From: Diadema antillarum
Lineage: Eukaryota
Direction: 5' to 3'
Assembly: GCF_040938485.1 (NCBI RefSeq)
Contig: NW_027272210.1
Location: 310,001-374,000 of the forward strand
Length of the DNA stretch: 64,000 nt
Shown here: positions 41,391 through 64,000 of the stretch, in pieces
Layout of the letters: every line of letters begins with the position of its first letter
Numbering within the stretch: the first letter of the stretch is position 1
The notes under the pieces: generated by a model
The model's input: the letters and a program-made list of their open reading frames with translations, nothing else
What the model was told of the DNA's origin: nothing
The model's database searches: none
Position numbers and translations under genes: made by a program

Positions 41391-44300
41391 ATTCTGTGAG
41401 CTGAAAAGGAAATGTCTTTACAAGGGAAGGCTAAAAGACACAGATTGATGTATGGCAGGGTTGATGACATTAAGATAAGATTGCCTGATTTTCATGCATA
41501 GACCTCAAGCAACAGGCATGTGCTTTCACACTGATAAAGAAATACAGTGGTATTTCATTATGTGAATGCAGATACACAGTGAAATACATCATAATGTGGT
41601 ACTTAAGGTGATATTTCAAACATTGCACAAAATGCACATAATTTGAGATGTGAATGTGAATTATGTGATGTATTATCACCAATGTACAGCTCTCATGTGA
41701 ATTAGACTTTTTGTTTCTTTTCCCATGGTAGAAACGGTCATGCGCAGTGTTTATCAGGAATACCAAGGTGTTTCTGTTTGGGTGACCCGCACCTCGTCAC
41801 AGTTAATGTTTGTGATGCATGTTTCAACCCAGCTCTCCCATAGTCAAGCATGTAAAAGATATATGGGTGTGTGTGATGATACTGATCACACATATTCCTT
41901 ATGTAAATGTAAGATTTTCAAGAAAAACTGTTTGGTTTCCACCTCAGTTTGCTTGGCTGTGGTAACCCTGCAAAGTTTTAAGCCTACTGAACACAGTCCC
42001 AGGTGTAAATTTTTGTTCAGTGCACCAATTGTAGCAATTTTATGCAGGGTGACGATATTTGGAACCCTGACGAGGTGCGGGTACCTCACTCTACCAAGTG
42101 AATTAACTGCAGTATCATTTACCATGGTTCTCTACCAACAACAAAAGTGCAAACAAATTCTGCAGTATGTAACACCAAGATAATTCTGATGCAAATGCAC
42201 AATTAAGAAGATATCTTTCTTTAGAACTGTTCAATCAAGCCAAAACTCTGTTGTATGAAGTGTCTTATTTTGAAATTAAGGGGAAAACACTTATGTATAA
42301 GTCTTGAAAGCTGAATTCTGATTGTGTGAAATATATATCATTGCAAAGGTTCAGTCTTAAATAATTGTTTGTACCATCACCATATTTTTTTTTCTGTCTT
42401 GACCATCAGTTATTGAGCATGGATAGTACTTGTCCACCATGTGCTTTTAAGAAAATTTGTGAGGAAGATTGTATAGTGAATAAACAGAACAGGTAAGGCT
42501 CCAATGAAATCTAATTATCAAGATCAAATGGAACAGGTAAGGGTACAATGAAATCTAATCAACAAGATCATTTCATCAACGCATACTGTGCAAGTCAGGT
42601 AAACAATCATGTGCTTGACCAACATTCCTGACACTGCAGTCAATACGTTTTCTTGTGTTTTATCTTTCTTTCTTGCTCAGTTAAGTATATATTTTGATCT
42701 TGTAGACTGCATGCTATGTCTAGCTACTTTGTGATTGTGTCAAAATTTGTAACTGCATGACGAAGGATGTATCAAAGAAACTGCCAATACAGAAGATTTG
42801 ACAGTTTCTACTTGAGAGATTTAGTTTGACATAGAGACCTCAGTGATATCAATCAGTAAGAAATACAGATTAATTTTATTTTTGAATGCTTGCTGGTACT
42901 ACGAAGTAATAATTTCAGATTTCTATCATTCAAAATTTTTTCTTTAGCAATATTATTTCAAAGGGTAAAAATAGAACACATATTTATATGAGCATATTTC
43001 TAGAGCAGCATGTAAATACTCTGTGGCCGATGGATCATCAAAAAAAAAAAAACATTAAAAAAAGGTTACTTCATAAATTTTTTCATCCAAGTAGTTTCAG
43101 TCATCTGTACTAGAAAAAAACATTGGTATCAATTATGCATACGTACATTTGAAACAACTTACTTGATCACATTAGATGTGTATATGTATGTAAGATGTAG
43201 TATGCCACATATAGTATGCATATGTCATACGGTAATAATTGGTTCAATGTACTGCATGTTTGAATGTTAAGTACTTTGAAACATTCTGTATATATAATGT
43301 TTGATAAATAGTAATGAGGAATCGTCATTGTCATAATTATTTCTACTATCATGCAAGACGTTCACCTGTTCAATCATACCTGCAACATTTCTAATTTCAT
43401 GGCAGCCAAGTCTCATAGACCAAATTAGCAGGGATGATTATGCAACTTTAATCTGTGAGACCTGAATACATGGTGTAATGTGAAATGGGCACTAGTACTC
43501 TATTCTCATGATACATTATAGATCTTGATGAAAATAACTCTATAATACCAACATGTGAGAGGGTTTTTTTCTCAATTTTTTTTTCTCTGCAAACCTTGAA
43601 GTCATTATGACATTCATCATACAAACGTTATCTGAATTGTAATAGAGCATTATGTGAGTACCTACTCTAGTATATATGCGAGGTTACGCTGGATAAGTTA
43701 ATACTACTAATTTACCTGATGCCCACAAAAATCTACGCAAGACCTTCACTTTCACATCCCACTACGCATTTTGTCAGCAAAGAGCATGCTGATGTAGACA
43801 ATAATGGTAAACGTCACCAAATATATTTCAAAAGCTGCAGTACACGAGTGCACCATGATATATACCTGCTGCCTATAATTGTATGTACGTAGGCTTGAAT
43901 CAAATTTGCATGTGAACATATTATAGAATGTACCCTTTTTAAAAATCTCAAATTATACGAATGGAAGCTGCTAAGATGTATCATTGGCTTTCTAGATTAA
44001 ACTAGAACTGTGTCAATATCAGTTTGAAGAATAAACTTCAATATCGGTTTAAAGAATAAACTTATTTTACTGGTTCCTACTTGTTACCAGAAATGTTCTT
44101 TTTGGCATCAATGTGCTAAGATTTCGGAGTAACGAATAACGTTACAAAAATATGGTCACTCCTTGTATTTCCTCTATTTAGACCTTGCATGTATGACAAA
44201 AATTAGGGACCCCATTTCACATAATGCAAACCCTTGAGAGGCCACTTCTACCCCATTTATACACAAAGCTAGGCCGAGGAGTGCTCCTGAAGCGCTTTGA

Positions 44301-44572
44301 CTTTAATAGGACCCTCCTAATCTGTTCACAGACAGAGAATCACCACTTGCCCAGACCACATGCGAATCGGCTGAGAGGGGCACACCATAAATGTCATGCA
44401 TGGTGACCTTCAGGTGCACCAAATACCACTTCCAGAGTGCTCTGAATGTTGGTGACCATTTATCCAGAGGTTCTCAGGGCACATCAGGAGCGCTCCTGAG
44501 CCTAAAGGCTAGAGAGGGGGGGGGGGGGGGGGAGGGGGCGTAATTTTAGAGCACCCCCGGTCGTGACTGACT

Positions 44573-45004
44573 AGGTGGGTCTTCATCAGCTCGAGCTTGA
44601 AGAATAGCCCACTATTTCTGATCCAAAGAATTAGCCTGATCAGAAAATAGCCCGCTAATTTTGCACCAAATAGTGAGCTATTCCGATCGGAAAATAAGCC
44701 AAAGAAATCTTGGATTTATTTGCAGAACAGCCAGCTGATTTGCAAAATAGCATGCTAATCTTAACGCGTCTTCATCAGCTCGAGCTTAAACATCGGCACT
44801 GCATGCGTTGCGCACCACGCTGGAATGTAGGCAGTCAGGTCAGAGTGTGTTCGCGCCAGCATTGAGCTTATAAACCCGACCGTGCCATGCCTGAAGCTCA
44901 AGCTGGTAAAGACGCGATTGCACATTTCAGCTGACTTCAGGCTTATTTCTCTGATCCCCCATAAGTGCGCTATTCTTCAAGCTTGAGCTCATGAAGACCC
45001 ACCT
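44573..45004. mobile_element. MITE with about 35-bp TIRs and 3-bp TSD (Harbinger-like)
   Basis: ACT|aggtgggtcttcatcagctcgagcttgaagaatagc ... gctattcttcaagcttgagctcatgaagacccacct|ACT. Empty site at about 57040. Confidence 0.8.
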
Positions 45005-47820
45005 ACTGTTCATACAGAGCTCAGAGGGGATCAGGAGTGCCCCTAGAGGGCTCTTGATGCCCTGAATAAATGGGATGTGACAGACCTAAAGTGGCAAGAT
45101 CCCTCAACAGTTTCCGAGACTACAACTGGAATGGTTCTAAAAACCCTCAGAAGACTATTGAAGGACCAAAAATTTGCCAGCAAATTTCTAAGAGATCCAT
45201 GTAGGACCTTAAAGATTGCTGAAAGTTCACTGAGAGACCAATAAGACTAATGAGAGATTGTTGAAAGATTATCTGGCATACTCCCTGAGATCTTCAAGAG
45301 ATCATTCAAGATCTCTGAGAGATTAGTAATGGTACCTCCATGATCTCTCAATAATCTTAAGTGACCTCCGAAAATGTGGCTATTCTTGTAAGACTGTCAG
45401 AAGATAATTATAAGACTAGCTAAACCCTTGAGTGCTCATTGACAGATCACAGAAAATCTGTGGAAAGACCTCTCAAGACCACTTTTCTTAAGAGACTGCT
45501 AATGACTCTCTTGAATTATGTCATTTTTTTTTTTTACCATAGTTTGCATTATACCATGTGCATGGTTGGCAATGCCCATGAATTTTAAAGATTACAGTAA
45601 AGCATGGCTTATGATTCCTCAAAATTAAATATTAAATCAAAAGCTTAAGACGTGCTTTTTTGTTTGTTTCTTTGTTGTTGGTTTGTTTGTTTTTGCGGGG
45701 TCATTTATGCAATTTAGGTGCATATATGTAATAAGTAATTAAGCATAATTATCCTGCTCCTCCCATAGCTGCATGGCTAACAATCTATTGTTCCTGATGC
45801 ATCTACACACTGTATATAAAGATTTATTTCACTTTTAACATAAATGCACTAAACATTTGGGTTTAAATAAACAACACGTAAGTAAACATGCATGTTTAAT
45901 TCTATGTAAATGTACACCTTGTACATACGGATGGTATAATTTTCATATTGTTCAATAGCAAAAATAACAACCCTTGATTCAGTCTTGTGATTGTATTTGG
46001 TTTCCAAGTCATTTGCTATTGACATCAATTGAATAGAATATTAATTTCACTCTGTACAAAGTGTCAGCTCCACTTGAAAATGTCTCAAGTTACGTACCTT
46101 CTTGGGTTGCATATTATATCAATGTCATATTAGTGAAATTGATATTGGGCTATGCACCCTGCTCTGTGTGATGAATGAAGTGAGATCTTTTACCTGCATG
46201 AGTAGTGACTCTCTTACACATTGGATCTCCAGTTTATTGTATGTCTTATCCGAGGGACAGAGTGTTTTGTCTCTTATTCTCAATACACAAAACACTGCTC
46301 AGTAAGACTAAGCAATCAAACATTTGGCTGTGGTGGCAGACATGCTATAAACTGAGCCAACTCACCGCCCTGGATTTCAGTTGGGTAATGACAAAAATGC
46401 AAATATTACCATAAAAGGTATGTCTGAAGTATTGCAATCTTGGATGATACCCAATGATGGTTGCTATGTGATTTATAAAAATCATTAGCATTGATTAATA
46501 AATGGCCACAGCATTATCCATCATGTGAGAGGGCATTGCATGCAGCCTGTTTGCTGCAGGCAATGCAATAAATTGTAGATGTACTACTGCTAGGGCATGA
46601 TTTACTCATTATGTACTAGTAACAGTTGATACCTAGCCACTATTGAACTGGAAAGGCACTTCAGTAATAAAGTTGTGTGCTATGATTGAGATTATTCCAC
46701 ACTTTTGATTTCAAAACAATCAAAATGATTGATTATCTTGGCAATCTATCAAAGCTTTCTTGGTATAGGTACTAGGTAGAAATTTTTGCAAGCATATTCA
46801 AAGTTTAAAATATGAATTTTGAGCCTGAAAATGCACTTGGTGGAGTCAAGTGATCTGCACATCCCTTCTTTAAATCATGTAGAACTACAAGACTTTCCTC
46901 CTGATGGTATTCATGAAATTATACATCTCCATCAATAAAGCACAGGATTCGCAAAGTAATCTTCATTGAATACATACCGGGTATTAGATATCAAAGCAAC
47001 AGTTTACAGCCCTGCCTCTACCAAAAACTGAAAGTCCCATAAATCATTTATATGGCTATGAATCTGCTCTGACTGCCCAATTACATTTCTGTGTTAGAGA
47101 ACACATTCTAGAATTACACCTATGATTATTTCATACAATGACTACCTCCCCAGAGGAGACATAATAGTGAGACATGCAGTGTAACTTGTAGTCATGACAA
47201 CGGACCATCAATCACGGACCTTACAAAAATATTACTGTCACTGTCAATTCCTGTGCGAGATCATCGCAACTCGTGGCCTACAATTTGTTCCTGCATGCAC
47301 AGCTACTTAGAGCTTTTCATTTTGCATCTGGTAACTGGAACGAGCTTGAAGACATAAAGACAAACATGGTCCTATGCACTCATTCCTGTGGCACATTGTG
47401 TGAAGAATTTATACCATTTGCTGGCCATTGCTGATCGCCTGCGGGTGTGATGAATTACAAGGGGTCTGGAACATCAGTCGTCAGTATGTGAGGAGGAGTG
47501 TGCATCCTACTCCTTGCGAAGAGAACTGTGGTGGGATCTTCGATCTGCATGCGTGAGTCATTATTTTCTCTGAAATTAGACCTCCATTTCACATCTGGTC
47601 CAATTTAAGGACAGTGTTTCTGCCTCTCGCTGGACAGAAGGGAGCAGCATGATGGCAAACAAAACTGCTCATACCAGTTCGACTCACATAGCGCAAAAAC
47701 CTAAAGCTTCAATCTTTAGTGCAAGACAGACTGGGATACAGTGAACGAGAAAGCCACCTCTTACTGCCCTTATGCATGGTGTCACAGGAGAGCCATCTGA
47801 TCAACTTAAGTGAACTTTCT

Positions 47821-48315
47821 GTGAGTACAACACTTGTACACTTATTCTTTCAAGACTGAGATAAGGACATTTCAACCATTTGGACAGCATGTGATTGTTG
47901 GACTAGCTTGGTAATACTGGATACTGACAGTTGAGATATGAATATCACAACTTGATACTGTTCAAGAACTAGATGGCACTTTTGTACCTCACAACCAGCA
48001 ATCTGAGCATATTACATAGGCCTAGATACTATCTGCAAATATATTCCAGTCTTCTGGAGCAATATTTCCTCACTAATGAATATGCAAATGTGCTAATAAC
48101 TGCAAGAGGTCATTGCAAAATATGTTGCTGGGACTATATACTCATTGACATTTGAAATATATATGCACTCTAGAACTGGAAGCAGCTACATAGTGCTATT
48201 TGCAGTTCTGTGAATTCCTGCAGCAGCAATCTGATGATATTCCTGTAGACTGCATACATTCAACAGCTTGCTTTAATACCCTGCAGAGTTTGATAGTGCT
48301 GCCATATTTTTGCAG
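47821..48315 (+). other. Predicted 5'UTR intron of TLR-C (paralogous intron about 61342-61842 for TLR-D)
   Basis: Donor ttct|gtgagta and acceptor atatttttgcag|GAAGC, 31 nt before the ATG, are both conserved in C and D. Prediction only. Confidence 0.4.
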
Positions 48316-48346
48316 GAAGCTAAAGTAATACCATTTTGAGGGCACC

Positions 48347-51142
48347 ATGACTGCCGTAAGGATGCACTCCTCAATGTGTGCTCTGTGCTGCATTCTACTG
48401 ATGCTGTGGGTGGTATTCCTACTGTCGATGTCAGCTGCCTCCCCACCAAACCAGACGATGTCTCTACAATGCAACTGCTGCTCCTATAATGAGACCAGCC
48501 GAGGCATCAAGGTCTACTGCAATCATTGCCATCTGAAGTCAGTTCCCCAAGACCTCCCGAACAGGACTATCACTTTAGATTTATCATACAACCTTATAAC
48601 ACAACTTCAAAATTACTCCTTTGCATCCCTCTGGAATCTAATCACCTTAAATTTGAGGAAGAATGCAATCTTTCATATTGAAAATGCTGCTTTCACACCT
48701 CTCATTCATCTCAAGATATTATCTCTTTCAGGAAATAAGTTGGCACAAGTTCATCCTGGGCTTTTACGTTCTAATAAGAATCTCTATCGTGTAGATTTAG
48801 GCGGTAATTTGTTTACTTCTGTGCCTTTAACTGCAATTAAAGACTTATCAAAGCTAAAGGCTATAATCTTAATGAAAAATTCAATACAATCATTTGACTT
48901 TCAGTCAGTCTCAGGGTGGAAGAGAATATCTGAAATAAACTTGTCAAGGAATGATATCAAATCCATTCCTCATCATGCTTTTTTTCCACTACAAAACAAC
49001 TCCATGCACGCTTTAGACCTCAGTCATAACAAAATCACTGCAGTGACAACTGGTGTATTCTCAGACCTTGCGACTGTTAATCTTGTTTCCTTTGATGTTA
49101 ATCATATTAACAAATTTGAGGTGCTCGCATTTATGGGTAACTTAAAGATTAAGAAACTGTCACTATATGGCACTTTGCTGCAGGAAATAATTCCACTTAA
49201 CAGGTCTGTACGTGATGAAGTTGCCATTCCTCACATACTGAAAATTGAGTTGAGTGGCAACAGAATCGTTGATGTCCCTCATTATGCATTTTGGGGTTTC
49301 TATCACACAGTAAGTCTTAGCATACAGAAGAACAGGATCACAAATATTGCAAACACATCTTTTTGTGGGCTCCATTCATTGCAGAGCCTGGAAATATCTG
49401 AAAATCACATTTCTTCTCTCCCACTGGGTGCATTTCACTGCAATGAAAACCTCCTCAATTTGAACATTTCCCACAATGAGATCATCATGTTGGATCCTGG
49501 CTCCTTCATGCAGCTGCCTAAGATACAACACCTTGATCTCTCCAATAACCTGATTCTCTCCTTCACATACAAAACCTGGACCACGGAAACTCTGCTCACT
49601 CTAGACATTTCTTTCAACAGTCTAGATAAACTTCCTAATGGTGTGTTATGGGGACTAAAAAATCTCAAAGTTCTAAATGTGTCTCACAACAAAATTGGAG
49701 GATATTCTCCATTTGCATTTGCACGAACACCTCATCTGCAGGAGCTGTATCTGACCTCAGAAGTCGCCTCTCTGTTAAGTGAAGTTTTCCGTGATATGAC
49801 AAATCTAAAAATACTGGATCTGTCATACACAAAACTTACACTGAATTCAACTTATCAGTTTACTGGAGCTGTATCACTGCAAGAACTAAGCTTAAGTTTT
49901 AACAATTTGGATAGCAAAAGTTTGTTTAATTACAAAACAAACCATTCTTTGTTTGCTGGTCAAGCAGTGCTTCAGGGGCTTTACCTGCAGGGAAATTCCT
50001 TGAACAACTTGGAACCTGGCACCTTCAGTTCACTGGGAAACCTATCATCATTGGATCTCTCTGACTCTGAGATCAATATACTGAAACCAGGACTGTTTCA
50101 AAATTTGACTTCCCTTACAACATTGTATCTCAGGGGAAACCAAATTCAAGAGCCATCTGCGGATGCCCTGTATGGTCTCCACAGTCTCAAAACTCTTTTC
50201 TTCGAAAAGAGTTCAGTCAGGTCTTTGCCACTCACACTGTTCAATGACACACCTCATCTTATCAGACTATTTCTGTCTGAGAATCACCTCAGCACCATAT
50301 TTCCTGGTACATTATTTCCTACCACTATACACTTAGATTTATCACAAAACCCACTCTCATGCACATGCGATTTAGCATGGTTCAGAAAGTGGGTTGAGCT
50401 AAGCAATGTTGTCCTAGTGCAACAGAATAACACGATTTGCTCAAGATCATCCTTTGAAACTTTAGTCAATCATCCTTTTTTACTCTTTAATTCAGAAGAA
50501 TTCTGCAGCTTAAATGTGACTCTTATAGTATCAGTTTCCTTGGTCCTTGTCATTGTGGGATATGTGGCTATAGCTGTATACTACAGACGTTGGTGGTTTC
50601 GCTACCGGCTCTATCTCCTGAAGCTAGCCATCTTGGGATATGAGGAAGTGGAAGACAATCAACAACCAGAGGACTATAGGCACCAGCTTAACATCATGTT
50701 CTCTGATGGGGATGAAGAGTGGGTCAACAATGTCATGAGACCAGCCATGGAAGAAAGATTTCCTCGGTTTGAAAGCATTCTCTGGGGTGACGACTATCTT
50801 CACATTGGTATGTACTTAGTAGACGCTATCCATCATGCCCTGGAAAACAGCTTCAAGACTGCTCTAGTGATCAGCAACGAGTCGGTGGAGGAGCAATGGT
50901 TTATGACCAAGATTCGCTTGGCCTTAGAACATATCAATGAAACCAAATTGGACAAAGTTATTCTGATTTTCAAGGAGCATGTTGAAGACGACCAACTTCC
51001 CTATCTTGTACGGCTCTTCCTGAGCTCTAACAGACCGTACTTGGAATGGGAAGAAGATGAATACAGACAGGATTTGTTTTGGGCCAAGCTCGAGAAGAAC
51101 TTCAGATCAAATAAGGTGATAAATAATGCAATTCCTGTATAG
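48347..51142 (+). CDS. TLR: Toll-like receptor (TLR-C), 931 aa, uninterrupted coding exon
   Basis: Signal peptide; LRRNT (CNCCSYNETSRGIKVYCNHCHLKSVP); LRR array; LRRCT (NPLSCTCDLAWF); TM followed by YYRRWW; TIR domain (YRHQLNIMFSDGDEEWV...LFWAKL). Confidence 0.96.
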   Translation: MTAVRMHSSMCALCCILLMLWVVFLLSMSAASPPNQTMSLQCNCCSYNETSRGIKVYCNHCHLKSVPQDLPNRTITLDLSYNLITQLQNYSFASLWNLITLNLRKNAIFHIENAAFTPLIHLKILSLSGNKLAQVHPGLLRSNKNLYRVDLGGNLFTSVPLTAIKDLSKLKAIILMKNSIQSFDFQSVSGWKRISEINLSRNDIKSIPHHAFFPLQNNSMHALDLSHNKITAVTTGVFSDLATVNLVSFDVNHINKFEVLAFMGNLKIKKLSLYGTLLQEIIPLNRSVRDEVAIPHILKIELSGNRIVDVPHYAFWGFYHTVSLSIQKNRITNIANTSFCGLHSLQSLEISENHISSLPLGAFHCNENLLNLNISHNEIIMLDPGSFMQLPKIQHLDLSNNLILSFTYKTWTTETLLTLDISFNSLDKLPNGVLWGLKNLKVLNVSHNKIGGYSPFAFARTPHLQELYLTSEVASLLSEVFRDMTNLKILDLSYTKLTLNSTYQFTGAVSLQELSLSFNNLDSKSLFNYKTNHSLFAGQAVLQGLYLQGNSLNNLEPGTFSSLGNLSSLDLSDSEINILKPGLFQNLTSLTTLYLRGNQIQEPSADALYGLHSLKTLFFEKSSVRSLPLTLFNDTPHLIRLFLSENHLSTIFPGTLFPTTIHLDLSQNPLSCTCDLAWFRKWVELSNVVLVQQNNTICSRSSFETLVNHPFLLFNSEEFCSLNVTLIVSVSLVLVIVGYVAIAVYYRRWWFRYRLYLLKLAILGYEEVEDNQQPEDYRHQLNIMFSDGDEEWVNNVMRPAMEERFPRFESILWGDDYLHIGMYLVDAIHHALENSFKTALVISNESVEEQWFMTKIRLALEHINETKLDKVILIFKEHVEDDQLPYLVRLFLSSNRPYLEWEEDEYRQDLFWAKLEKNFRSNKVINNAIPV

Positions 51143-52549
51143 ATAATACAGCTCCATTAATTTGCAGTATCTCTGGAGTTAGAAATAGACAAATAGGGTT
51201 ATGTACAATAGGTGAAAAACCTGGAAAATTCCTATTAAATTGAAGGGACATAATCTTCACCACACAGCAACTTCACTGACTTACTCTGACTAATGTAATA
51301 AAAAATGGAAACTACACATGAATGAATACAGCATGTCTTTTGCTACATTGAATAAACTGAGTAGATTACATGAACAGATCTAGAGAAAGCACACACTCAA
51401 TGAAGTGACAAACCATGTCAAAATTGGCAACACCCTGGAAGTCCACACTTTCTACTTTAGAGATTTAGTTTGACATAGAGACCTCAGTGACATCAATCAG
51501 CAAGAAATACAAATTCATTTTATTTCTGAATGCTTGCTGGTACTACTGATAGTAATAATTTCAGATTTCTATCATTCAAAATATGAAAAATTATTTCTTT
51601 TAAGCAACATTATTTCAAAGGGTAAAAATAGAACACATATTTATATCAGCATATTTCTAGACCAGCATGTGAATACTCTGTGGCCTGATGGATCATTAAA
51701 AAAAAAAAAATCATTTAAAAAAAGTTACTTCACAAATATTTTCATCCAAGTAGTTTCAGTCATCTGTACTGGAAAAAAAAACAAACATTGGTGTTGATTA
51801 TGCATACATACATTTGGAACAACTTACTTTAGTGGGGTGGCTTAGTGAAATTATCGTGACACGGCGGACAAAAGCATGATTTTTTCACCAAAGGTACTTC
51901 ATGATGTACCTTCTCAAAAAATAGGGTGCTCCAAGAAAATTGATGCTGGGAAGGAGGTTAGAGGTCAAAGGTCAATGACCTTTATTTGTGAAATAGGTTT
52001 TTTGGCTATTTCTCAGGTCAGGAATATCCAATCTGGATAAAACTTGGCAGGAAGAATATTGAGAACAAGTAAAATATTTTGATTGAATTTGGGGTGAAAT
52101 TTCCAAAGGTCAAAGGTCAAAGGTCAATGAACTTTTTCTAAAAATCATGTTTTTGTTTATTTCTCCAGGTAGGAAGATTCAATTTTCACAAAATTTGATA
52201 TGAACGTTGTATAGAAGGTACCAAGAGTATAAACCAGGGGTCAAATATAATTGTTGATTTGTGCGTTGCCATGGCAACCCAAAACTAGGGTTTTTAATTG
52301 AAGTTAGTTACAGGAGGCTATTTTCCAGTTTGGAAGAGATTCCATTTGAATAGGTACAACTGATCAACGGGATGTATAGAGGTTTGAAATACTTTTCATT
52401 AGTGTTAAGTGGTATGTTGCCATGGCAACTACATATATAGATTTTGGTTAAACTTAAAGGAGACTTCAGAACTTATGAATTTGAAGAGATTTCCATCAGG
52501 GTTGGTATTATTGATCAACAAAAAAGTCGCCAGACAAAGATTTGTCACC

Positions 52550-53090
52550 TTTATAGCATGTGGGTTGAGTGAATGCAGCAACAATAGTAGAACACATCAG
52601 TGAGAGTTTGAGGAAAATTGGACAATCCGTTCTAAAGTTATGAATTTTTGAAGTTTCTGCTCATGCAGTGGAGGCTGGATGAGAAGACTACTATACCTTG
52701 TAATATCACATGTGTACAACGATATAAAGAATGAATAAAGAAAATTCAACATAAATTATTTTCGCTTACAAAAGGATACTCGACTTCTCTTTCAGAAGGC
52801 AGGGGGAATAATATTACCCTTGACATACGTCACTAGCAAGTCAAAGAAACTATGTGAACTTTATTCAAAAAGTATGGTTTTGTGAAATTCTCATTTCATT
52901 TTCCTTAGAATGTGCGCATGTGACATCATACACTGTGGTAGTCTTTTCATTCAGCCGCGACTGTGCAGATACCTTAAAAAATCATAACTTTTGAACGGAT
53001 TGTACGATTTTTTCCAAGCTTTCTGTGATGTGTCCTACTAATATTGTTGTATTCACTGAATCCACGTGCGCATGAAGGTGGACTTGTCCT
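52550..53090. mobile_element. Kolobok-like MITE nested in the 3.7-kb element, left terminus eroded
   Basis: Right end gtggacttgtcct|TTAA. The internal halves are imperfect inverted repeats (ccgttctaaagttatgaatttt / aaaatcataacttttgaacgg). Confidence 0.55.
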
Positions 53091-53780
53091 TTAAGGACAG
53101 ATTCTGAAAGAGCAGACTGTAAGCTTTAAAATGATGTATCACACAATTCAAAGGGACTCCCCTAACCTATCTAAATAATAATACCGGTACTGGAAAGAAA
53201 GCACACACTCTGGATAAGTATGAACTGAGAAAAGAGGCTGCATTGTCTATTTTAGCGTTTAATCTTTACCAAGCTGTCTCATGTCATTATGTTCATCTTT
53301 TCTTCCCCCCTCCAATTTTCATTTGAGTTTGTCATTATTAATTTTTGATGATAAGAACGATGCCACAAGGCATTGTTTCTTAAAAATGCTTCAACTGCTC
53401 CTTCAGGTCCAAAATCTACATCAATATATATTATTTTCCTGATCTCCTCAACATTTTCCAAAAATAAAGCATACACCTTTTATGCATTGAGTCCTCCTTT
53501 TTGTGGATAATTAAAGGCAAAAACCCAAAATTAGTGCTTGAAAATTATTCTTAAGTGTGAGTTACGGATAGAAAGAACCTCTGTAAAAAAAAAAATGAAT
53601 CTGTATAATCAATGTTAAGTATTGTTAATAACACAAAATGTGAACAATATTTCTATGATAACATGTTTCCAGACTAAACCGTCCGCATTTATGCTTTAAT
53701 GAGAAAAATACTGATATCTCTTTATATGTTTGCTTTGATTGCAAAAACTGTATATGGTAGGATGTCTTGTGATACAACAG

Positions 53781-53917
53781 GGGGGCATTTCATGAAGCAG
53801 TTTGGTCAGATATTTTTCTGACAAACTGTTACAAACTACAGAAATCCTTGCATCTGATTGGCAGAGAGCAAATTTGTCCGACAACTTGTCGGACAAAATG
53901 CTTCATGAAATGCCCCC
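53781..53917. mobile_element. Short Harbinger-like MITE (GGGGCATTTCATGAAG TIR)
   Basis: TIRs gggggcatttcatgaagca / tgcttcatgaaatgccccc. Empty site acaacagacct in the related sequence at about 57945. Confidence 0.75.
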
Positions 53918-56747: not shown

Positions 56748-56916
56748 GGGGGGCATTTCATGAAGGAACTTGTCAGATAAAATGTCCGACAAGTCAATCA
56801 TATTCGACAAGTTCAGAGAAACCAGCCAATCTGACTAAAGAATTTCTCAAAACTTGTCGGATATAATTGACTTGTCAGATATTTTATCTGACATGTTCCT
56901 TCATGAAAGACCCCCC
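56748..56916. mobile_element. Harbinger-like MITE with related termini
   Basis: ggggggcatttcatgaaggaac ... gttccttcatgaaagacccccc. Absent at the paralogous site about 44435. Confidence 0.72.
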
Positions 56917-57697
56917 TGATCAAGTGCTCTAAATGTTGCTGACCATTTGTCAAGAGGTTAGGGCACATCAGGAGCACTCTTGAGCCTAAAGGCTGGAGAG
57001 GGGAGGGGGTCATAATTTTAGAGCACCCCAGGTCATGACTGACAGTTCGTACAGAGCTCAGAGGGGATCAGGAGTGCCCCTGGAGGGCTCTTGATGCCCT
57101 GTATAAATGGGATGTGAGAGACCCAAAGTGGCAAGATCCCTCAACCTGTTTCCGAGACCAGATAAAAAAGTGTCTATGTGGAATGGTTCTAAGAACCCTC
57201 AAAAGATTATTGAAGAATCAAAAATTAATTTGCCAGCAAATTTTTCAGAGATCTACTTGGGACCTTGAAAATTGCTGAAAGTTCACTGAGAGACCACTAA
57301 GACTACTGTGAGAGATCACTGAAAGATCATCTGACATACTCCCTGAGATCTTCTAGAGATTATGATTTATTCAAGATCTCTGAGAGATTAGTCTTTCAAT
57401 GGTTCCTCAATGATCTCTCAATAATATTTAGTGACCTCCAAAAGTGCGGCTTCTTGCAAGACTGACAGAAGATAAATATAAGACTAGCAAAACCCTTGAG
57501 TGCTCATTGAGAGATCGCAGAAAGACTGTGGAAAGACCACAGAAGACCATTTTTTTGAAGAGACCGCTGAAGACATTCTTGAATTACGTCATTTTTTTTA
57601 ATACCATGTGCATGGTTGGCAATGCCCATGAGTTTTAAAGATTACAGCAAAGCATGGCTTATGACCCCTGAAATTAAATTTAAATCAAAAGCTTTAA

Positions 57698-58022
57698 GGC
57701 ATAATTTACCATTTGTATCATAGATGACACACAAATCCAGCATTAGTGCTTTAGATAGTTCTAAAATGTGAGTTAGAAACAGAAACTACTGTAAAAAAAA
57801 AAAAAAAAATGAATTCGTATAATCGATGTTAAGTATTGTTAAGTGCACCAAATGTGAAAAATAGATTTAACAAAAATGTTTCCAGATCTCCTCATATTTT
57901 AGGCCTTATTGTAAAAATTTTATATGGTAGAATGTTATGTGATACAACAGACCTGCACATATGCATCAAATGTGAAATCATGAACATTTTTGAAATCACT
58001 GTTCCCAGAGGTAAACAGGACT
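57698..58022. mobile_element. TTAA-associated MITE; a related copy is nested at about 53511-54030
   Basis: Inserted into aaagcttaagacgtg (contiguous at about 45640). 57750-58000 is homologous to 53530-53990. Confidence 0.6.
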
Positions 58023-58435: not shown

Positions 58436-59639
58436 CAAGGATGCCAGTGGCAAATTGCTCTTGGGCCGGAAATTTTTTTTGTGAACGAAACTGATGTGCG
58501 CGAAGCGCACATCACGAGCGCGAAGCGCGAAGTCCCTTCGGCCGGGGTCCAGGGCCCGCTCAAGGGCCCTGGAAGCTCTGGGGTTCTTAGATGCTCTCTG
58601 GTGCAATCTGAGCATTTCTGAGGGCTCTTCTTTCCTCAAATCTAATCCAGAGAAATGAATTTGTAGCAAAAATAAAGAAGTCCTAGTGCCGTAAACTCCG
58701 TAGTTTTGCTTCGTTCAGCTGACTCGATCGACTCACCATACTCTCTCAGCGCTGTAGCTACAGCGAGAGGGCAGCATGATCCATGCACTGCAGTATACAT
58801 CGCCTAGAATTAGAAACACCACACGTTGTTCGATCGCGATCGCACGTGCTGGTATAACGCTTTCCAGACAATAATGTGGTCGTATTCTAGAAAAAAAAAA
58901 TTTGTAGCAAAAATAAAGAAGTCCTAGTGCCGTAAACTCCGTAGTTTTGCTTCGTTCAGCTGACTCGATCGACTCACCATACTCTCTCAGCGCTGTAGCT
59001 ACAGCGAGAGCGCAGCATGATCCATGCACTGCAGTATACATCGCCTAGAATTAGAAACACCACACGTTGTTCGATCGCGATCGCACGTGCTGGTATAACG
59101 CTTTCCAGACAATAATGTGGTCGTATTCTAGAAAAAAAAAATTTGTAGCAAAAATAAAGAAGTCCTAGTGCCGTAAAATCCATAGTTTTGCTTCGTTCAG
59201 CCGACTCAATCGACTCACCACACCGTCTCAGCGCTGTTGCTATAGCGAGAGCGCAGTATGATTCATGCACCGCGACCGCACATACTAGTAGTACATCGCA
59301 TAGAAACACCACACACTGTTCGATCGCTATCATCGCACGTGTTGCATGTCCCATGGCCCAGCTAGCAGCAGCAACATCGCGCTAGTTTTGCATGACAGTC
59401 GTTTTGTGATATTCTCATGCCCAAGTATATGTGAAACATACTACGGAAATCGTGAAAGTGAATGTCCCGTAAGTTTAGATGATCATATTTTTTCGTTTTT
59501 CTTTCTTTCTTTCTTTGTTTCTTTCTCGTGTTTTCCGGCTTTCCCACACAGACGGAAATAATATCATGAAGCCGGAAATTGGACACCAAAATATGAAAAA
59601 GCCGGAATTCCGGCTATTGCCAGAAAACTGGCATCCCTG
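58436..59639. mobile_element. 1.2-kb hAT-like non-autonomous element with an internal 241-bp tandem repeat
   Basis: TIRs caaggatgccag / ctggcatccctg; ATTAGT duplicated at 58430-58435 and 59640-59645; empty site at about 46125-46135 in unit C; repeat units start at 58660, 58901 and 59142. Confidence 0.78.
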
Positions 59640-61873
59640 ATTAGTGAAATTGATATTGGGCTATGCACCCTGCTCTGTGTGATGAATGAAGTGAGATCTT
59701 TTACCTGCATGAGTAGTGACTCTCTTACACATTGGATCTCCAGTTTATTGCATGTCTTATCCGAGGGACAGAGTGTTTTGTCTCTTATTCTCAATACACA
59801 AAACACTGCTCAGTAAGACTAAGCAATCAAACATTTGGCTGTGGTGGCAGACATGCTATAAACTGAGCCAACTCACCGCCCTGGATTTCAGTTGGGTAAT
59901 GACAAAAATGCAAATATTACCATAAAAGGTATGTCTGAAGTATTGCAATCTTGGATGACACCCAATGATGGTTGCTATGTGATTTATAAAAATCATTAGC
60001 ATTGATTAATAAATGGCCACAGCATAATCCATCATGCGAGAGGGTATTGCATGCTGCCTGTTTGCTGCAGGCAATGCAATACATTGTAGATGTACTACTG
60101 CTAGGGCATGATTCAATCATTATGTACTAGTAACAGTTGATACCTAGCCACTATTGAACTGGAAAGGCACTTCAGTAATAAAGTCATGTGCTACGATTGA
60201 AATTATTCCACACTTTTGATTTCAAAACGATCAAAATGATTGATTATCTTGGCAATCTATCACAGCTTTCTTGGTAGGTACTAGGTAGAAATTTTTGCAA
60301 GCATATTCAAAGTTTAAAATATGAATTTTGAGCCTGAAAATGCACTTGGTGGAGTCAAGTGATCTGCACATCCCTTCTTTAAATCATGTAGAACTATGAG
60401 ACTTTCCTCCTGATGGTATTCATGAAATTAAATCTCCATCAATAAAGCACAGGATTCGCAAAGTAATCTTTATTGAATACACATACCGGGTATTAGATAT
60501 CAAAGCTACAGTTTACAGCCCTGCCTCTACCAAAAACTGAAAGTCTCATAAATGATTTATTTGGCGAATGAATCTGCTCTGACTGCGCAATAACATTTCT
60601 GTGTTAGAGAACACATTCTAGAATTACACCTATGATTATTTCATACAATGACTACCTCCCCAGAGGAGACATAATAGTGAGACATGCAGTGTAACTTGTA
60701 GTCATGACAACGGACCATCAATCACGGACCTTACAAAAATATTATTGTCACTGTCAATTCCTGTGCGAGGTCATTGCAACTCGTGGCTTAATACCTGTTC
60801 CTGCACGCACAGCTACTTAACTTTAGAGCTTTCCATTTTGCATCTGGTAACTGGAACAAGCTTAAAGACATAAAAACAAACATGGTCCTATGCACTCATT
60901 CCTGTGGCACATTGTGTGAAGAATTTATACCATTTGCTGGCCATTGCTGATCACCTGCGGGTGTGATGAATTACAAGGGGTCTGGAACATCAGTCGTCTG
61001 TGTGTAGGGAGGGACCATTTTGAGTGTGCATCCTACTCCTTGCGAAGAGGAATGTGGTGGGATCTTCTGCATACATGAGTCAAGACTTCTTCTTGAATCA
61101 GACCTCCATTTCACATCTGGTCCAATTTAAGGACAGTGTTTTTGCCTCTCGCTAGACGGAAGGGTGCAGCGTGATGGCAGACAAAACTGCTCATACCAGT
61201 TCGACTCACATAGCGCAAAAACCTAAAGCTTCAATCTTTAGTGCAAGACAGACTGGGATACAGTGAACGAGAAAGCCACCTCATATTGCCCTTATGCATG
61301 GTGTCACAAGAGTGCAATCTGATCGACTTAAGCGAACTTTCTGTGAGTACAACACTTGTACACTTATTCTTTCAAGACTGAGATAAGGACATTTCAACCA
61401 TTGGGTCAGCATGTGATTGTTGGACTAGCTTAGTAATACTGGATACTGACAGTTAAGATATGAATATATCACAACATGATACTGTTCAAGAACTAGATGA
61501 CATTTTTGTACCTCACAACCAGCAATCTGAGCATATTACATAGGCCTAGATACTCTCTGCAAACATATTCCAGTCTTCTATCAGAGCAATCTTTCCTCAC
61601 TAATGAATATGCAGGTGTGCCAATAACTGCAAGAGGTCATTGCAAAATATGCTGCTGGGACTATATACTCATTGACATTTGAAATATATATGCACTCTAG
61701 AACTGGAAGCAGCTACATAGTGCTATTTGCAGTTCTGTGAATTCCTGCAGCAGCAATCTGATGATATTCCTGTAGACTGCATACATTCAACAGCTTGCTT
61801 TAATACCCAGCAGAGTTTGATAGTGCTGCCATATTTTTGCAGGAAGCTAAAGTAATACCATTTTGAGGGCACC

Positions 61874-64000
61874 ATGACTGCCGTAAGGATGCACTCCTCA
61901 ATATGTGCTCTGTGCTGCATTCTACTGATGCTGTGGGTGGTGTTCCTACTGTCGATGTCAGCTGCCTCCCCACCAAACCAGATGATGTCTCTCCAACGCA
62001 ACTGCTGCTCCTATGAAGAGACCAGCCGAGTCATCAAGGTCTACTGCAATCATTGCCATCTGAAGTCAGTTCCCCAAGACCTCCCAAACAGGACGATCAC
62101 TTTAGATTTATCATACAACCTTATAACGCAATTACAAAATTACTCCTTTGCACCCGTCTGGAATCTAGTCACCTTAAATTTGAAGAAAAATGCAATCTTT
62201 CATATTGAAAATGCTGCTTTCACACCTCTCATTCATCTCAAAATATTATCTCTTTCAGGAAATAAGTTGACACAAATTCAGCCTGGGTTACTATGTTCTA
62301 ATAAGAATCTCGGTCTCTTAGATTTAGGAAATAACTTGTTTACGTTTGTACCTGTAACTGCAATAAAAAACTTATCAAACTTAGAGACATTGATTCTAAT
62401 GAAAAATTCAATACAATCCTTTGATTTTCAGTCAGTTTCACGGTGGAAGAAAATATCTGAAATAAACTTGTCATTGAATAATATTATATCCATTCCTCAT
62501 CATGCTTTTCTGCCATTACAAAATAACTCCCTGCGCATTTTAGACCTCAAGTATAACAAAATAAATGAAGTGACACCTGGGGTATTCTCGGACCTCACAA
62601 CCGTTAATTCTCTTTTACTTGATGTTAATCATATTAACAAATTTGAAGTGCTAGCATTCATGGGCAGCTTAAAGATTAAGAAACTGACCCTAATTGGCAC
62701 TTTGCTAAAGGAGATAATTCCACTGAACAAGTCTACATGTGATACAGTTCCCATACCTCACATAATGAAAATTGAGTTGACTGGCAATGAAATAGTTGAA
62801 ATCCCTCACTATGCATTTTGTGGTTTTTATCACACTGTAAGTCTTTTGATACAGAAGAACAGGATCACAAATATTGCAAACACATCTTTTTGTGGACTTC
62901 ATTCATTGCAAATCCTGGACATATCTGAAAATCATATTTCTTCTCTGCCACTGGGTGCATTTCACTGCAATGAAAACCTCCTCCAGTTGAACATTTCCCA
63001 TAATAAAATTCTCATATTGCATCCTGGCTCCTTCATACAGCTGTCTATGATACAACACCTTGATCTATCTAATAACATGATTTTCTCCTGCAATTACAGA
63101 CTTTGGACCACTAAAACTCTGCTCACTTTAGACATCTCTTTCAATAGTTTAGATAAAATTCCTCACAGCATGTTAAGGGGACTCACAAATCTCAAAGTTC
63201 TAACTGTGTCTCACAACAAGATTAGAGGATATTCTCCTTTTTTATTTGCACACACACCAAATTTGCAAGAGTTGTATCTGATCTCAGAAGAAGCGTCTTA
63301 CCTGTGTGAAAATTTCCGTGACATGACTTACTTACAAATACTGGATCTGTCATATACAAAACTTGCATTGAATTCCACACATCAGTTTACTGGAGCCGAG
63401 TCACTGCAAAAACTTCATTTGCGTTTCAACAATTTAGGAAGTGAAAGTTTGTTTGATACCCAAACAAACCATTCCTTGTTTGCTGGTCAAGCAGTACTCC
63501 AGGGGCTGTACCTGCAGGGAAATTCCTTGAACAACATGGAACCTGGAACCTTCAGTTCACTGACAAGCCTGAAATCCTTGGATATCTCTGACTCTGAGAT
63601 CAAAGTACTGAAACCAGGACTATTTAACAATTTGACTTCCTTGACAACATTGTATCTAAGGGGTAACCCAATTAAAGAGCCATCTGCAAATACCCTGTAT
63701 GGTCTCCACAGTCTCAGAACTCTTTTCTTTGAAAAGAGTTCAGTTAGGTCTTTGCCAATCACACTGTTCAATGACACACCTCATCTTTTTAAACTATTTC
63801 TATCTGAGAATCACCTCAGCACCATATTTCCTGGTACATTATTTCCTACCACTATACACTTAGATTTATCACAAAACCCACTCTCATGCACATGCGATTT
63901 AGCATGGTTCAGAAAGTGGGTTGAGCTAAGCAATGTTGTCCTTATGCAATCAAATAAGACTGTTTGCTCAAGATCCTCTTTTGAAACTTTAGTCAATCAT
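61874..64000 (+). CDS. TLR: Toll-like receptor (TLR-D), 5' 709 codons, runs off the right edge
   Basis: It is missing from the ORF track because there is no stop inside the window. Manual translation from the ATG at 61874 is open through 64000 and collinear without indels with TLR-C codons 1-709 (offset 13527 bp), ending FETLVNH in the LRRCT. Confidence 0.93.
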   Translation, partial: MTAVRMHSSICALCCILLMLWVVFLLSMSAASPPNQMMSLQRNCCSYEETSRVIKVYCNHCHLKSVPQDLPNRTITLDLSYNLITQLQNYSFAPVWNLVTLNLKKNAIFHIENAAFTPLIHLKILSLSGNKLTQIQPGLLCSNKNLGLLDLGNNLFTFVPVTAIKNLSNLETLILMKNSIQSFDFQSVSRWKKISEINLSLNNIISIPHHAFLPLQNNSLRILDLKYNKINEVTPGVFSDLTTVNSLLLDVNHINKFEVLAFMGSLKIKKLTLIGTLLKEIIPLNKSTCDTVPIPHIMKIELTGNEIVEIPHYAFCGFYHTVSLLIQKNRITNIANTSFCGLHSLQILDISENHISSLPLGAFHCNENLLQLNISHNKILILHPGSFIQLSMIQHLDLSNNMIFSCNYRLWTTKTLLTLDISFNSLDKIPHSMLRGLTNLKVLTVSHNKIRGYSPFLFAHTPNLQELYLISEEASYLCENFRDMTYLQILDLSYTKLALNSTHQFTGAESLQKLHLRFNNLGSESLFDTQTNHSLFAGQAVLQGLYLQGNSLNNMEPGTFSSLTSLKSLDISDSEIKVLKPGLFNNLTSLTTLYLRGNPIKEPSANTLYGLHSLRTLFFEKSSVRSLPITLFNDTPHLFKLFLSENHLSTIFPGTLFPTTIHLDLSQNPLSCTCDLAWFRKWVELSNVVLMQSNKTVCSRSSFETLVNH

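What the first reader, a model, noticed from the sequence alone, without database searches (positions are those of the whole stretch)
46122..50473. TLR-C/TLR-D identity mosaic: near-identical promoter and LRRCT around a much older LRR core
Seen (by-eye counts): 46122-46446 vs 59640-59965 differ at about 1 base in 320. The last roughly 190 bp before the ATG are almost identical, and the signal peptide to LRR2 region is about 95% identical. Over LRR3-LRR11 (48721-49337 vs 62248-62864) there are about 30-35 synonymous differences in about 200 codons plus many replacements. A 140-bp identical tract then follows (50276-50415). Silent sites in the core are therefore more diverged than the adjacent non-coding DNA, which selection on protein alone cannot explain. 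Inference: the ligand-binding core was swapped in from a more distant paralog or allele, or the flanks were homogenised by gene conversion, which would be a cassette-like route to germline receptor diversity.
Basis: partly seen in the sequence, partly recalled or inferred. Interest (0 to 1): 0.72.

Follow-up and report, generated by a model that had tools for sequence, protein, structure and literature searches.

The report
Mosaic sea-urchin TLR gene pair
Two neighbouring Toll-like receptor genes of the sea urchin Diadema antillarum have recently exchanged their promoters and signalling ends but kept very old, distinct ligand-binding cores, a clean new example of a known way that tandem immune genes evolve.

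Summary
The window is Diadema antillarum, in a tandem array of intronless TLR genes. TLR-C (48347-51142) and TLR-D (61874 onward) differ at 1 of 319 bases in 46129-46447. The 2.2-kb 5' flank has K 0.04 and the N-terminus is 94.8% identical. The LRR core (48750-50150) is 83% identical (dS 0.415, 4-fold K 0.31). Positions 50276-50415 are identical.

The mosaic is real. It recurs on the second haplotype contig of this assembly and in the D. setosum array. Both cores are ancient lineages with orthologues in D. setosum (97.5-98%). Most of the flank similarity also predates the species split.

At least three later short C-to-D gene-conversion tracts can be polarised: 46129-46514, about 47083-47234 and about 48126-48375. 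The last two are on one haplotype only. Orthologue and allele comparisons show no raised mutation rate in the core.

No recent donor for either core exists in the genome. I therefore favour flank homogenisation around protected cores over a core swap, but this is not settled.

Unequal-crossover chimeras are common in both species. The process is known from mammalian TLR1/TLR6 but had not been analysed in the echinoderm TLR papers I could read.

The parts
46129..46514 (+). Start of C/D homology and recent C-to-D conversion tract (partner 59640-60025). It mostly overlaps copies of a dispersed repeat (46146-46725).
   Evidence: There are 2 mismatches in 386 bases (K 0.005). The D. setosum paralogs differ here by K 0.051, D vs its orthologue s1 by 0.065, and D vs sC1 by 0.024. 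The AU test rejects a (D,D',s1) clade at p 0.025. The repeat has more than 1000 first-look candidates in the genome at 70-83% identity.
46515..48346 (+). 5' flank / putative promoter of TLR-C, homologous to 60026-61873 upstream of TLR-D. The similarity is older than the species split.
   Evidence: K is 0.047 for C-D and 0.060 for sC1-s1, against 0.026 and 0.031 for the orthologue pairs. The tree splits C-type from D-type at 100/100, and a species clade is rejected at p-AU 1.5e-5. The flank is not alignable to the flanks of the other paralogs (56-68%).
47083..47234 (+). Identical run marking a C-to-D conversion tract found only on the C1322 haplotype (partner 60593-60744).
   Evidence: At 47138, 47153 and 47162, D equals C and C', while the other allele D' carries the state seen in D. 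setosum D-type genes.
48126..48375 (+). Conversion tract across the proximal promoter and start codon, C to D, on the C1322 haplotype only (partner 61653-61902).
   Evidence: At six sites (48221-48302), C, C' and D share derived states. D' and all four D. setosum genes keep the ancestral state. There is 1 mismatch in 250 bp.
48347..51142 (+). TLR-C, an intact intronless gene of 931 aa with signal peptide, LRR ectodomain, LRRCT, TM (50522-50584) and TIR.
   Evidence: The ORF was found. Pfam gives LRR_8 at 2.4e-84. Both TIR models score just below their curated cut-offs (TIR_2 3.1e-5, 24.9 vs 28 bits; TIR 20.0 vs 21.3 bits). The C-terminal 222 aa match the TLR2 TIR structure 1fyx at 1.3e-14. The closest named relatives are Diadema and Strongylocentrotus TLRs.
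48347..48749 (+). Young N-terminal block (signal peptide to about LRR2).
   Evidence: It is 94.8% identical to D. C and D are sisters at 99/98 among all paralogs. Fixed differences number 1-5 per 50 bp up to 48749.
48750..50150 (+). Old LRR core. C-type and D-type are separate ancient lineages.
   Evidence: It is 83% identical to D, with dS 0.415 and dN/dS 0.32. Four-fold K is 0.31 between paralogs in both species, against 0.033 and 0.062 between orthologues. There are 211 fixed paralog differences and 14 allelic ones in 48751-50060. Fixed differences jump to 10 or more per 50 bp at 48750.
50232..50415 (+). Old shared tract inside the LRRCT, including the exact 140-bp run 50276-50415.
   Evidence: No C-type/D-type fixed difference occurs here in either species. 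It holds 51 family-polymorphic sites without a mismatch (p<0.0005). Third positions here are not unusually conserved across the family (0.77-0.80).
50416..50540 (+). Small island of old divergence between the shared tract and the TM-TIR block.
   Evidence: There are 11 fixed differences in 50400-50500. The sites are listed.
50541..51400 (+). Young TM-TIR block and 3' flank.
   Evidence: TM-TIR is 95.2% identical (C' vs D 97.5%), with 4-fold K 0.106. C and D are sisters at 96/92, and the D. antillarum copies group to the exclusion of s1 at 94/90. The 3' flank has K 0.078.
59640..61873 (+). 5' flank of TLR-D, partner of 46129-48346.
61874..64000 (+). TLR-D, cut by the window end. The full 931-aa ORF is in L015.
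58658..59270 (.). A 241-bp tandem repeat (2.5 copies) in a D-specific insertion that ends the C/D homology on the left.
   Evidence: C 45646-45851 matches D 58025-58218, and homology then resumes at 46129/59640.
42801..45851 (+). Far intergenic sequence upstream of C, collinear with 51445-58218 upstream of D at intermediate divergence.
   Evidence: K is 0.08-0.14 in four blocks. The element is confined to this array, apart from a 140-bp dispersed repeat at its end.

Best explanation
TLR-C and TLR-D are two old members of a tandem array of intronless sea-urchin TLR genes. Their ligand-binding LRR cores belong to separate lineages that were already distinct before D. antillarum and D. setosum split. 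Everything around the cores has been repeatedly homogenised between the two genes by non-allelic homologous recombination: the 2.2-kb 5' flank, the N-terminus, a 185-bp LRRCT tract, TM-TIR and the 3' flank. An older round of exchange, before the species split, left about 5% divergence. Later short gene-conversion tracts of 150-390 bp, donor C and acceptor D, made parts of the promoter nearly identical. Two of these tracts still segregate on one haplotype only. The cores escape exchange, by inference, for two reasons: 17% divergence leaves too little uninterrupted identity to start heteroduplex formation, and selection keeps distinct binding specificities. Shown: the mosaic ages, the trans-species cores, and the direction and recency of three tracts. 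Also shown are the lack of a raised mutation rate in the core and the presence of unequal-crossover chimeras in both species. Inferred: that the first event homogenised the flanks rather than replaced a core, and why the core is protected.
For: The neutral-site age mosaic and the permutation tests come. The same mosaic is present on the second haplotype contig C93. The 1.75-Gb assembly retains both haplotypes (PMC13511894). The mosaic is also present in D. setosum. Cores are orthologous across species: C-sC1 97.5% and D-s1 98.0%, against 83% between types. The flank tree groups by gene type, not by species (100/100, AU p 1.5e-5). Three C-to-D tracts are polarised with D. setosum as outgroup. 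Two sites carry a haplotype-specific state shared by both paralogs. No donor was found: a genome search with the core returns only the 14 array genes, and the best non-allelic match is 84%. The core tree is star-like with terminal branches of about 0.1. The rate is not elevated in the core: orthologue 4-fold K is 0.033/0.062 against flank 0.026/0.031, and allelic divergence is 0.9% and 0.2%. Recombination is active in the array, as shown by C93_3, C93_4, E, sC2, sC3 and the patchwork core of s2.
Against: The old block is internal, with two boundaries, so flank homogenisation needs at least two events where a core replacement needs one. Far intergenic DNA upstream of the two genes has K 0.08-0.14, much younger than the core. 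That could mean a recent whole-unit duplication followed by a core replacement. The AU test on the core does not reject a C+D clade (p 0.09). The allele-specific patches in LRRCT-TM are partly shared with D. setosum paralogs, so their timing is ambiguous.
Confidence: 0.62

Rival explanations
1. Core replacement. C and D arose from a fairly recent tandem duplication of a whole unit (K about 0.05-0.1). Before the species split, a single conversion tract of about 1.5-1.7 kb then pasted the LRR core of a distant paralog or divergent allele into one copy. The donor has since been lost.
For: One event explains an internal old block bounded on both sides. Far intergenic DNA is also much younger than the core (K 0.08-0.14). 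Conversion tracts inside cores do occur in this array, as in the s2 patchwork. Two different cores (80% identical) occupy the same array position on the two haplotypes, I versus C93_7.
Against: No donor exists in either haplotype or in the D. setosum genes held. The nearest core to D has 4-fold K 0.18 (s2) and the nearest to C has K 0.30. The intergenic element is also 80-85% identical next to the unrelated A/B genes, so intergenic similarity does not date unit duplication.
Confidence: 0.3
2. Same age throughout. The core merely evolves faster because of local hypermutation or diversifying selection, which inflates silent and replacement differences.
For: Replacements are many in the core (dN 0.134). 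LRR cores of sea-urchin TLRs are reported to be the most variable part and to contain positively selected sites (PMC3367398).
Against: dN/dS in the core is 0.32. Orthologue silent divergence in the core is at most twice that of the flank, while paralog divergence is 6-7 times higher. Allelic divergence in the core is 0.2-0.9%, no higher than in the flank. Both core types exist as orthologues in D. setosum.
Confidence: 0.04
3. Assembly artefact. The near-identical tracts come from collapse or consensus mixing of the two paralogs.
For: The assembly is an uncollapsed diploid HiFi assembly of a repeat-rich, 2.5% heterozygous genome.
Against: The mosaic is reproduced on the other haplotype contig and in an independent assembly of another species. 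The haplotype-specific tracts are 150-250 bp patches inside long unique context. They carry derived C-lineage states, not random mixtures.
Confidence: 0.04

Closest known systems
Gene conversion between mammalian TLR1 and TLR6 (Kruithof et al. 2007, PMC2077338; vertebrate TLR1 family, PMC3125219)
   Same: In both cases tandem TLR paralogs have the C-terminal LRRs, LRRCT, TM and TIR homogenised by conversion, while the ligand-binding N-terminal or central LRRs stay divergent. In TM-TIR the D. antillarum C and D copies group together before the D. setosum orthologue (94/90). In 46129-46514 paralogs are closer than orthologues.
   Different: Here the homogenised part also covers 2.2 kb of 5' flank and the N-terminus, so the old block is internal. 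Most of the similarity predates the species split rather than being renewed independently in each species. Conversion tracts are caught as polymorphisms between two haplotypes. The array has seven or more genes with copy-number and chimera variation.
Expanded sea-urchin TLR multigene families (Buckley and Rast 2012, PMC3367398)
   Same: Both concern intronless TLR genes in tandem arrays, with diversity concentrated in the LRRs and frequent pseudogenes. Gene A and gene H are broken here.
   Different: That paper's text contains no mention of gene conversion, recombination, unequal crossing-over or chimeras. The segment-wise ages, trans-species cores and polarised tracts shown here were not part of it.
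Birth-and-death plus sequence exchange in plant R-gene (NLR/RLP) clusters and in vertebrate MHC/KIR clusters (from general knowledge, not tested here)
   Same: Both involve tandem immune receptors, unequal crossing-over that produces chimeras, homogenised non-recognition parts and old recognition-domain lineages.
   Different: The protein family and phylum differ.
Cassette-based receptor assembly (lamprey VLR copy choice; chicken Ig pseudogene conversion)
   Same: The only shared theme is patching LRR or variable segments by conversion-like copying.
   Different: Those systems are somatic. They use incomplete donor cassettes around one incomplete or single expressed gene and depend on deaminases. 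Here every unit is a complete gene with its own flank, and all events seen are germline.

Membership tests
Toll-like receptor (sea-urchin expanded, intronless type) | Extracellular LRR solenoid with an LRRCT cap | tested here: met
   LRR_8 scores 2.4e-84 with 10 stretches, and LRR_4, LRR_5 and LRR_1 also match. The CTCDLAWF cysteine motif lies at residues 672 onward.
Toll-like receptor (sea-urchin expanded, intronless type) | Single transmembrane helix followed by a cytoplasmic TIR domain | tested here: met
   A hydrophobic stretch spans residues 726-746. The Pfam TIR models score just below their gathering cut-offs (TIR_2 24.9 vs 28 bits; TIR 20.0 vs 21.3 bits). The C-terminal 222 aa match the TIR structures of TLR2, TLR10, TLR6 and TLR1 at E 1e-14 to 1e-9.
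Toll-like receptor (sea-urchin expanded, intronless type) | Single-exon gene in a tandem array with close echinoid TLR homologues | tested here: met
   There are uninterrupted ORFs of 924-945 aa at 7-13 kb spacing. The homologues are named TLRs of Diadema, Strongylocentrotus and Lytechinus.
Interlocus gene conversion / concerted evolution (TLR1/TLR6 type) | Paralogs within a species more similar than orthologues between species in the tract | tested here: met
   The feature is met for 46129-46514 (C-D 0.005 vs D-s1 0.065). It is met for TM-TIR, where the D. antillarum copies form a clade at 94/90. It is not met for the main 5' flank 46515-48346 (paralogs 0.047, orthologues 0.026-0.031), which was therefore exchanged before the split.
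Interlocus gene conversion / concerted evolution (TLR1/TLR6 type) | Significant runs of identity at family-polymorphic sites, and heterogeneity of silent divergence along the gene | tested here: met
   The Sawyer-type permutation gives 0 of 2000. The max-chi-square test gives 0 of 200.
Interlocus gene conversion / concerted evolution (TLR1/TLR6 type) | Incongruent trees for different segments | tested here: inconclusive
   C and D are sisters in the flank, N-terminus and TM-TIR (96-100% support). In the core they are separated (98/97), but the AU test does not reject a C+D clade (p 0.09). The age difference is decisive; the topology is not.
Interlocus gene conversion / concerted evolution (TLR1/TLR6 type) | Donor and acceptor identifiable with an outgroup | tested here: met
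   Derived C-lineage states are found in D on one haplotype, while D' and all D. setosum genes keep the ancestral states.
Unequal crossing-over chimera | A single breakpoint with a change in copy number or order | tested here: not met
   The C/D pair has an internal old block with two boundaries. The feature is met by other array members: C93_3, C93_4, E, sC2 and sC3.
Dedicated cassette diversification system (VLR-like or Ig-pseudogene-like) | Incomplete donor cassettes flanking an expressed acceptor gene | tested here: not met
   All units are complete genes with their own flanks. No core fragments were found elsewhere in the genome.
Dedicated cassette diversification system (VLR-like or Ig-pseudogene-like) | Somatic variation | not testable with these tools

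The most novel reading that the evidence does not exclude
The array may work as a germline module-shuffling system. Conserved anchors (signal peptide to LRR2 on one side, LRRCT-TM-TIR on the other) flank old LRR cores. Recombination at these anchors repeatedly re-assorts promoters, cores and signalling tails. Examples are the reciprocal D-promoter/C-core gene sC3 in D. setosum, E, C93_4, and I versus C93_7 at one position. Short tracts also patch cores, as in s2. Populations would then carry many segregating receptor combinations kept by selection, possibly relevant to disease resistance in a species hit by mass die-offs.
Probability: 0.25. Interest if true: 0.6.

Novelty: new member of a known kind. 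Interest (0 to 1): 0.4.

Why it matters
Sea urchins carry hundreds of TLR genes, and how that repertoire diversifies is poorly documented at the level of individual events. This locus gives a dated, polarised record with four parts. Ligand-binding cores persist as trans-species lineages. Promoters and signalling ends are exchanged. Conversion tracts of 150-390 bp are still polymorphic. Whole-gene chimeras differ between the two haplotypes of one animal and between sister species. It also gives a practical warning. Gene trees of echinoderm TLRs built from TIR domains or full lengths will mix histories. Diploid assemblies of D. antillarum contain structurally different TLR haplotypes. The mechanism itself is textbook non-allelic recombination, so the result extends a known principle to a new clade and does not change it.

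Tried and rejected
1. A donor for either core. The genome-wide DNA search with 48700-50100 found only the 14 array genes, and the best non-allelic match was 84%. The sliding nearest-paralog scan shows no relative above 93% in any 150-bp window of the core.

2. Hypermutation of the core. This was rejected by the orthologue and allele comparisons.

3. Family-wide constraint as the explanation for the 140-bp identical tract. Third-position identity there is ordinary (0.77-0.80), yet 51 family-polymorphic sites agree between C and D. It is therefore an exchange tract. It is shared with D. setosum and so is old.

4. Far intergenic similarity as a clock for unit duplication. I abandoned this because the same element is 80-85% identical next to the unrelated A/B genes.

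5. Reading the clustered C-private sites in TM-TIR as a recent D-to-C' conversion. I weakened this reading because several of those states are shared between C and D. setosum sC3, and between C' and sC1.

7. D. setosum gene s4. It was not retrieved because it is not in the 90% clusters of E/F and lies in the 2.4-kb gap between the held loci.

8. AU test for core incongruence. It was not significant (p 0.09).
Full report
**What is in the window.**
The window is G000:C1322:310001-374000 of a 1.75-Gb, 2963-contig assembly. Protein names from public sources identify the organism as the sea urchin Diadema antillarum. The window holds four intronless TLR genes:
- A (29513-32291), broken at 30479.
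- B (38616-41390).
- C (48347-51142, 931 aa).
- D (61874 onward), cut by the window end.

C has LRR_8 at 2.4e-84, a transmembrane stretch at residues 726-746 and a TIR domain. The Pfam TIR models score just under their cut-offs, but the TIR matches the TLR2 TIR structure at 1.3e-14. A/B and C/D are two separate pairs. Between the pairs, only the TIR region aligns, at 72%.

The array continues downstream with E, F, G, H (frameshifted) and I. A second contig, C93, carries a matching array of seven genes at 99-99.8% identity to C and D. Two papers on this assembly report a 703-Mb haploid estimate, 2.52% heterozygosity and 84% duplicated BUSCOs. The later paper states that the 1.75-Gb assembly retains both haplotypes. 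C93 and C1322 are therefore the two haplotypes of one animal.

**The observation.**

| Region | Result |
|---|---|
| 46129-46447 vs 59640-59958 | 1 mismatch in 319 |
| 221 bp before the ATG | 1 mismatch |
| N-terminal 404 bp | 94.8% identical |
| 48722-49336 (205 codons) | 35 differences in synonymous codon pairs, 50 replaced codons |
| 50276-50415 | exact 140-bp run |

Homology starts abruptly at 46129/59640. A D-specific insertion containing a 241-bp tandem repeat (58658-59270) interrupts the otherwise collinear intergenic DNA there.

Silent-site divergence is strongly uneven along the pair.

| Segment | NG dS | 4-fold or non-coding K |
|---|---|---|
| 5' flank 46129-46514 | n/a | 0.005 |
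| 5' flank 46515-48346 | n/a | 0.047 |
| N-terminus | 0.093 | 0.10 |
| LRR core | 0.415 | 0.31 |
| LRRCT | 0.162 | 0.20 |
| TM-TIR | 0.166 | 0.106 |
| 3' flank | n/a | 0.078 |

A two-breakpoint max-chi-square test on non-coding plus 4-fold sites isolates 48547-50452 (49/220 vs 113/2571 mismatches), and no permutation of 200 comes near it. The density of fixed differences places the 5' boundary at about 48750 and the 3' boundary at about 50150. A further small old island lies at 50416-50540.

**The mosaic is neither an artefact nor a rate effect.**
It recurs on the other haplotype contig. It also recurs in the independently assembled D. setosum array, fetched through the protein clusters. Core dN/dS is 0.32. 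Orthologue 4-fold divergence in the core is 0.033 (C-sC1) and 0.062 (D-s1), against 0.026 and 0.031 in the flank. Paralog divergence is 0.31 in the core against 0.047 in the flank. Allelic divergence in the core is 0.9% for C and 0.2% for D. A higher mutation rate therefore cannot account for the core. The segments have different ages.

**Dating with the sister species.**
D. setosum has four genes of this type: sC1, sC2, sC3 and s1.
- In the core, C groups with sC1 and sC3 (97.5%).
- D groups with s1 and sC2 (98%).
- The two types are 83% identical in both species.

Both cores are therefore trans-species lineages. The 5' flank 46901-48346 also groups by gene type (100/100), and a species clade is rejected at p-AU 1.5e-5. 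Most of the flank similarity (K about 0.05) thus arose before the species split, at roughly twice the orthologue divergence. The core split is six to seven times the orthologue divergence.

**Recent conversion tracts.**
Three tracts can be polarised, each with C as donor and D as acceptor.
- **46129-46514.** C-D K is 0.005, yet sC1-s1 is 0.051, D-s1 is 0.065 and D-sC1 is 0.024. The orthologue clade (D,D',s1) is rejected at p 0.025. D was overwritten by C after the split, on both haplotypes.
- **About 47083-47234.** D on C1322 carries C states, while D' on C93 carries the states of the D. setosum D-type genes.
- **About 48126-48375, across the start codon.** At six sites, C, C' and D share derived states. 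D' and all four D. setosum genes keep the ancestral state.

The last two tracts are polymorphic, so they are recent. Two further sites carry a haplotype-specific base shared by both paralogs.

The 185-bp interval 50232-50415 has no type-specific difference in either species. It contains 51 family-polymorphic sites that agree between C and D (0 of 2000 permutations). It is not unusually conserved across the family. I read it as an old exchange tract.

**Which event came first.**

In favour of flank homogenisation:
- Neither core has a donor. The genome search finds only the 14 array genes, and the best non-allelic match is 84%.
- The nearest core has 4-fold K 0.18 for D and 0.30 for C.
- The core tree is star-like.
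- Conversion in the flanks is directly observed.
- The intergenic element next to these genes is 80-85% identical even beside the unrelated A/B genes. Non-core DNA is therefore exchanged independently of gene type.

In favour of a core replacement:
- The old block is internal, so one conversion of 1.5-1.7 kb would suffice.
- Far intergenic DNA is younger than the core (K 0.08-0.14).
- Conversion inside cores does occur in this array.

I put about 0.6 on flank homogenisation and 0.3 on core replacement. The AU test on the core does not reject a C+D clade (p 0.09), so the case rests on ages, not topology.

**The wider array.**
Recombination products are common.
- On C93, gene 3 joins the far-upstream sequence of E to the body of F.
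- Gene 4 on C93 joins a G-type 5' half to an F-type LRRCT-TIR and 3' flank.
- E is identical to F through the core but D-like from the LRRCT onward.
- In D. setosum, sC3 has a D-type promoter on a C-type core, the reciprocal of the arrangement under study.
- Also in D. setosum, sC2 has a D-type body with the 3' flank of sC1.
- The D. setosum gene s2 matches F in the N-terminus, LRRCT and TIR (K 0-0.03). Its core is a patchwork: about 95% like D/s1 over codons 368-445 and 95-99% like G/s3 over codons 460-525.
- I and C93_7 occupy the same array position but have cores only 80% identical.

**Comparison with what is known.**
The closest precedent is gene conversion between mammalian TLR1 and TLR6. 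There the C-terminal LRRs, TM and TIR are homogenised while the ligand-binding LRRs diverge (PMC2077338; see also PMC3125219). The main paper on echinoderm TLR family evolution does not mention gene conversion, recombination or chimeras (PMC3367398). Neither D. antillarum genome paper analyses TLRs.

The finding is therefore a new, well-resolved member of a known kind, not a new mechanism. Nothing supports a dedicated cassette system. All units are complete genes, no fragment donors exist, and somatic variation could not be examined.

**Limits.**
- D. setosum gene s4 was not retrieved.
- Four-fold site counts are small in the N-terminus and LRRCT (50-60 sites).
- Permutation tests on other gene pairs were not corrected for multiple testing.

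Noticed in passing
L020 (gene I, C1322) and L027 (gene C93_7): The genes at the last sampled array position on the two haplotypes share 3' flanks (92-93%) but have LRR cores only 80% identical (4-fold K 0.25). D. setosum s5 is orthologous to C93_7 in the core (K 0.03) but to I in TM-TIR (K 0.03). This may be a segregating core alternative or a gene-content polymorphism.
   Followed up: partly
L028:10001-12784 (D. setosum s2) vs L017 (F): s2 is the positional orthologue of F (N-terminus, LRRCT and TIR K 0-0.03), but its core is a patchwork. Codons about 368-445 are 92-95% like D/s1 and codons about 460-525 are 95-99% like G/s3. F is 72-80% identical to everything in that stretch. These are conversion tracts inside the ligand-binding core.
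   Followed up: partly
window 50161-50590 (C) vs L021 (C' on C93): The two alleles of C differ at clustered sites. C shares its states with D. setosum sC3, and C' shares its states with sC1. This is either trans-species polymorphism or sorting of two ancestral C copies.
   Followed up: partly
L021-L027 vs L015-L020: The two haplotypes each carry seven genes of this subfamily but in different structures. C93_3 is an E/F fusion and C93_4 is a G-5'/F-3' chimera. C-D spacing is 13.5 kb on C1322 and 9.6 kb on C93. C93 may also hold one more copy of the intergenic element, and so possibly one more A/B-type unit.
   Followed up: partly
window 33525-35273, 42768-44385, 51445-51829 and 55503-56721: An intergenic element is found only in this array (eight hits across both haplotypes). 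It is 80-90% identical between copies although it lies next to very different gene types (A/B versus C/D). Its last 140 bp belong to a dispersed repeat with many genomic copies.
   Followed up: partly
window 28561-32356 vs 37678-41458: The A/B pair shows its own identity mosaic. Identity is 74-82% in the 5' flank, 80-90% in the N-terminal LRRs and 95-98.5% in the TIR region. Gene A is broken by a stop at 30479.
   Followed up: partly
L028-L033 (D. setosum OZ188196.1, 22.49-22.58 Mb): The whole TLR array lies within the span of one large minus-strand gene model (EF-hand and WD40 domains, 1117 aa). The TLR genes appear to be nested in an intron of it.
   Followed up: no
window 46146-46725: The most identical part of the C/D flank consists of two dispersed repeat copies. 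There are more than 1000 first-look candidates in the genome, at 70-83% identity. The element type was not determined.
   Followed up: no
L033:10001-12797 and L033:16612-19407 (D. setosum sC1, sC2): Both reading frames are interrupted, at about codon 351 in sC1 and codon 464 in sC2. NCBI flags sC1 as a low-quality protein. These are either pseudogenes or assembly errors.
   Followed up: no
window 9508-9648: A run of 141 N (assembly gap or masked stretch).
   Followed up: no
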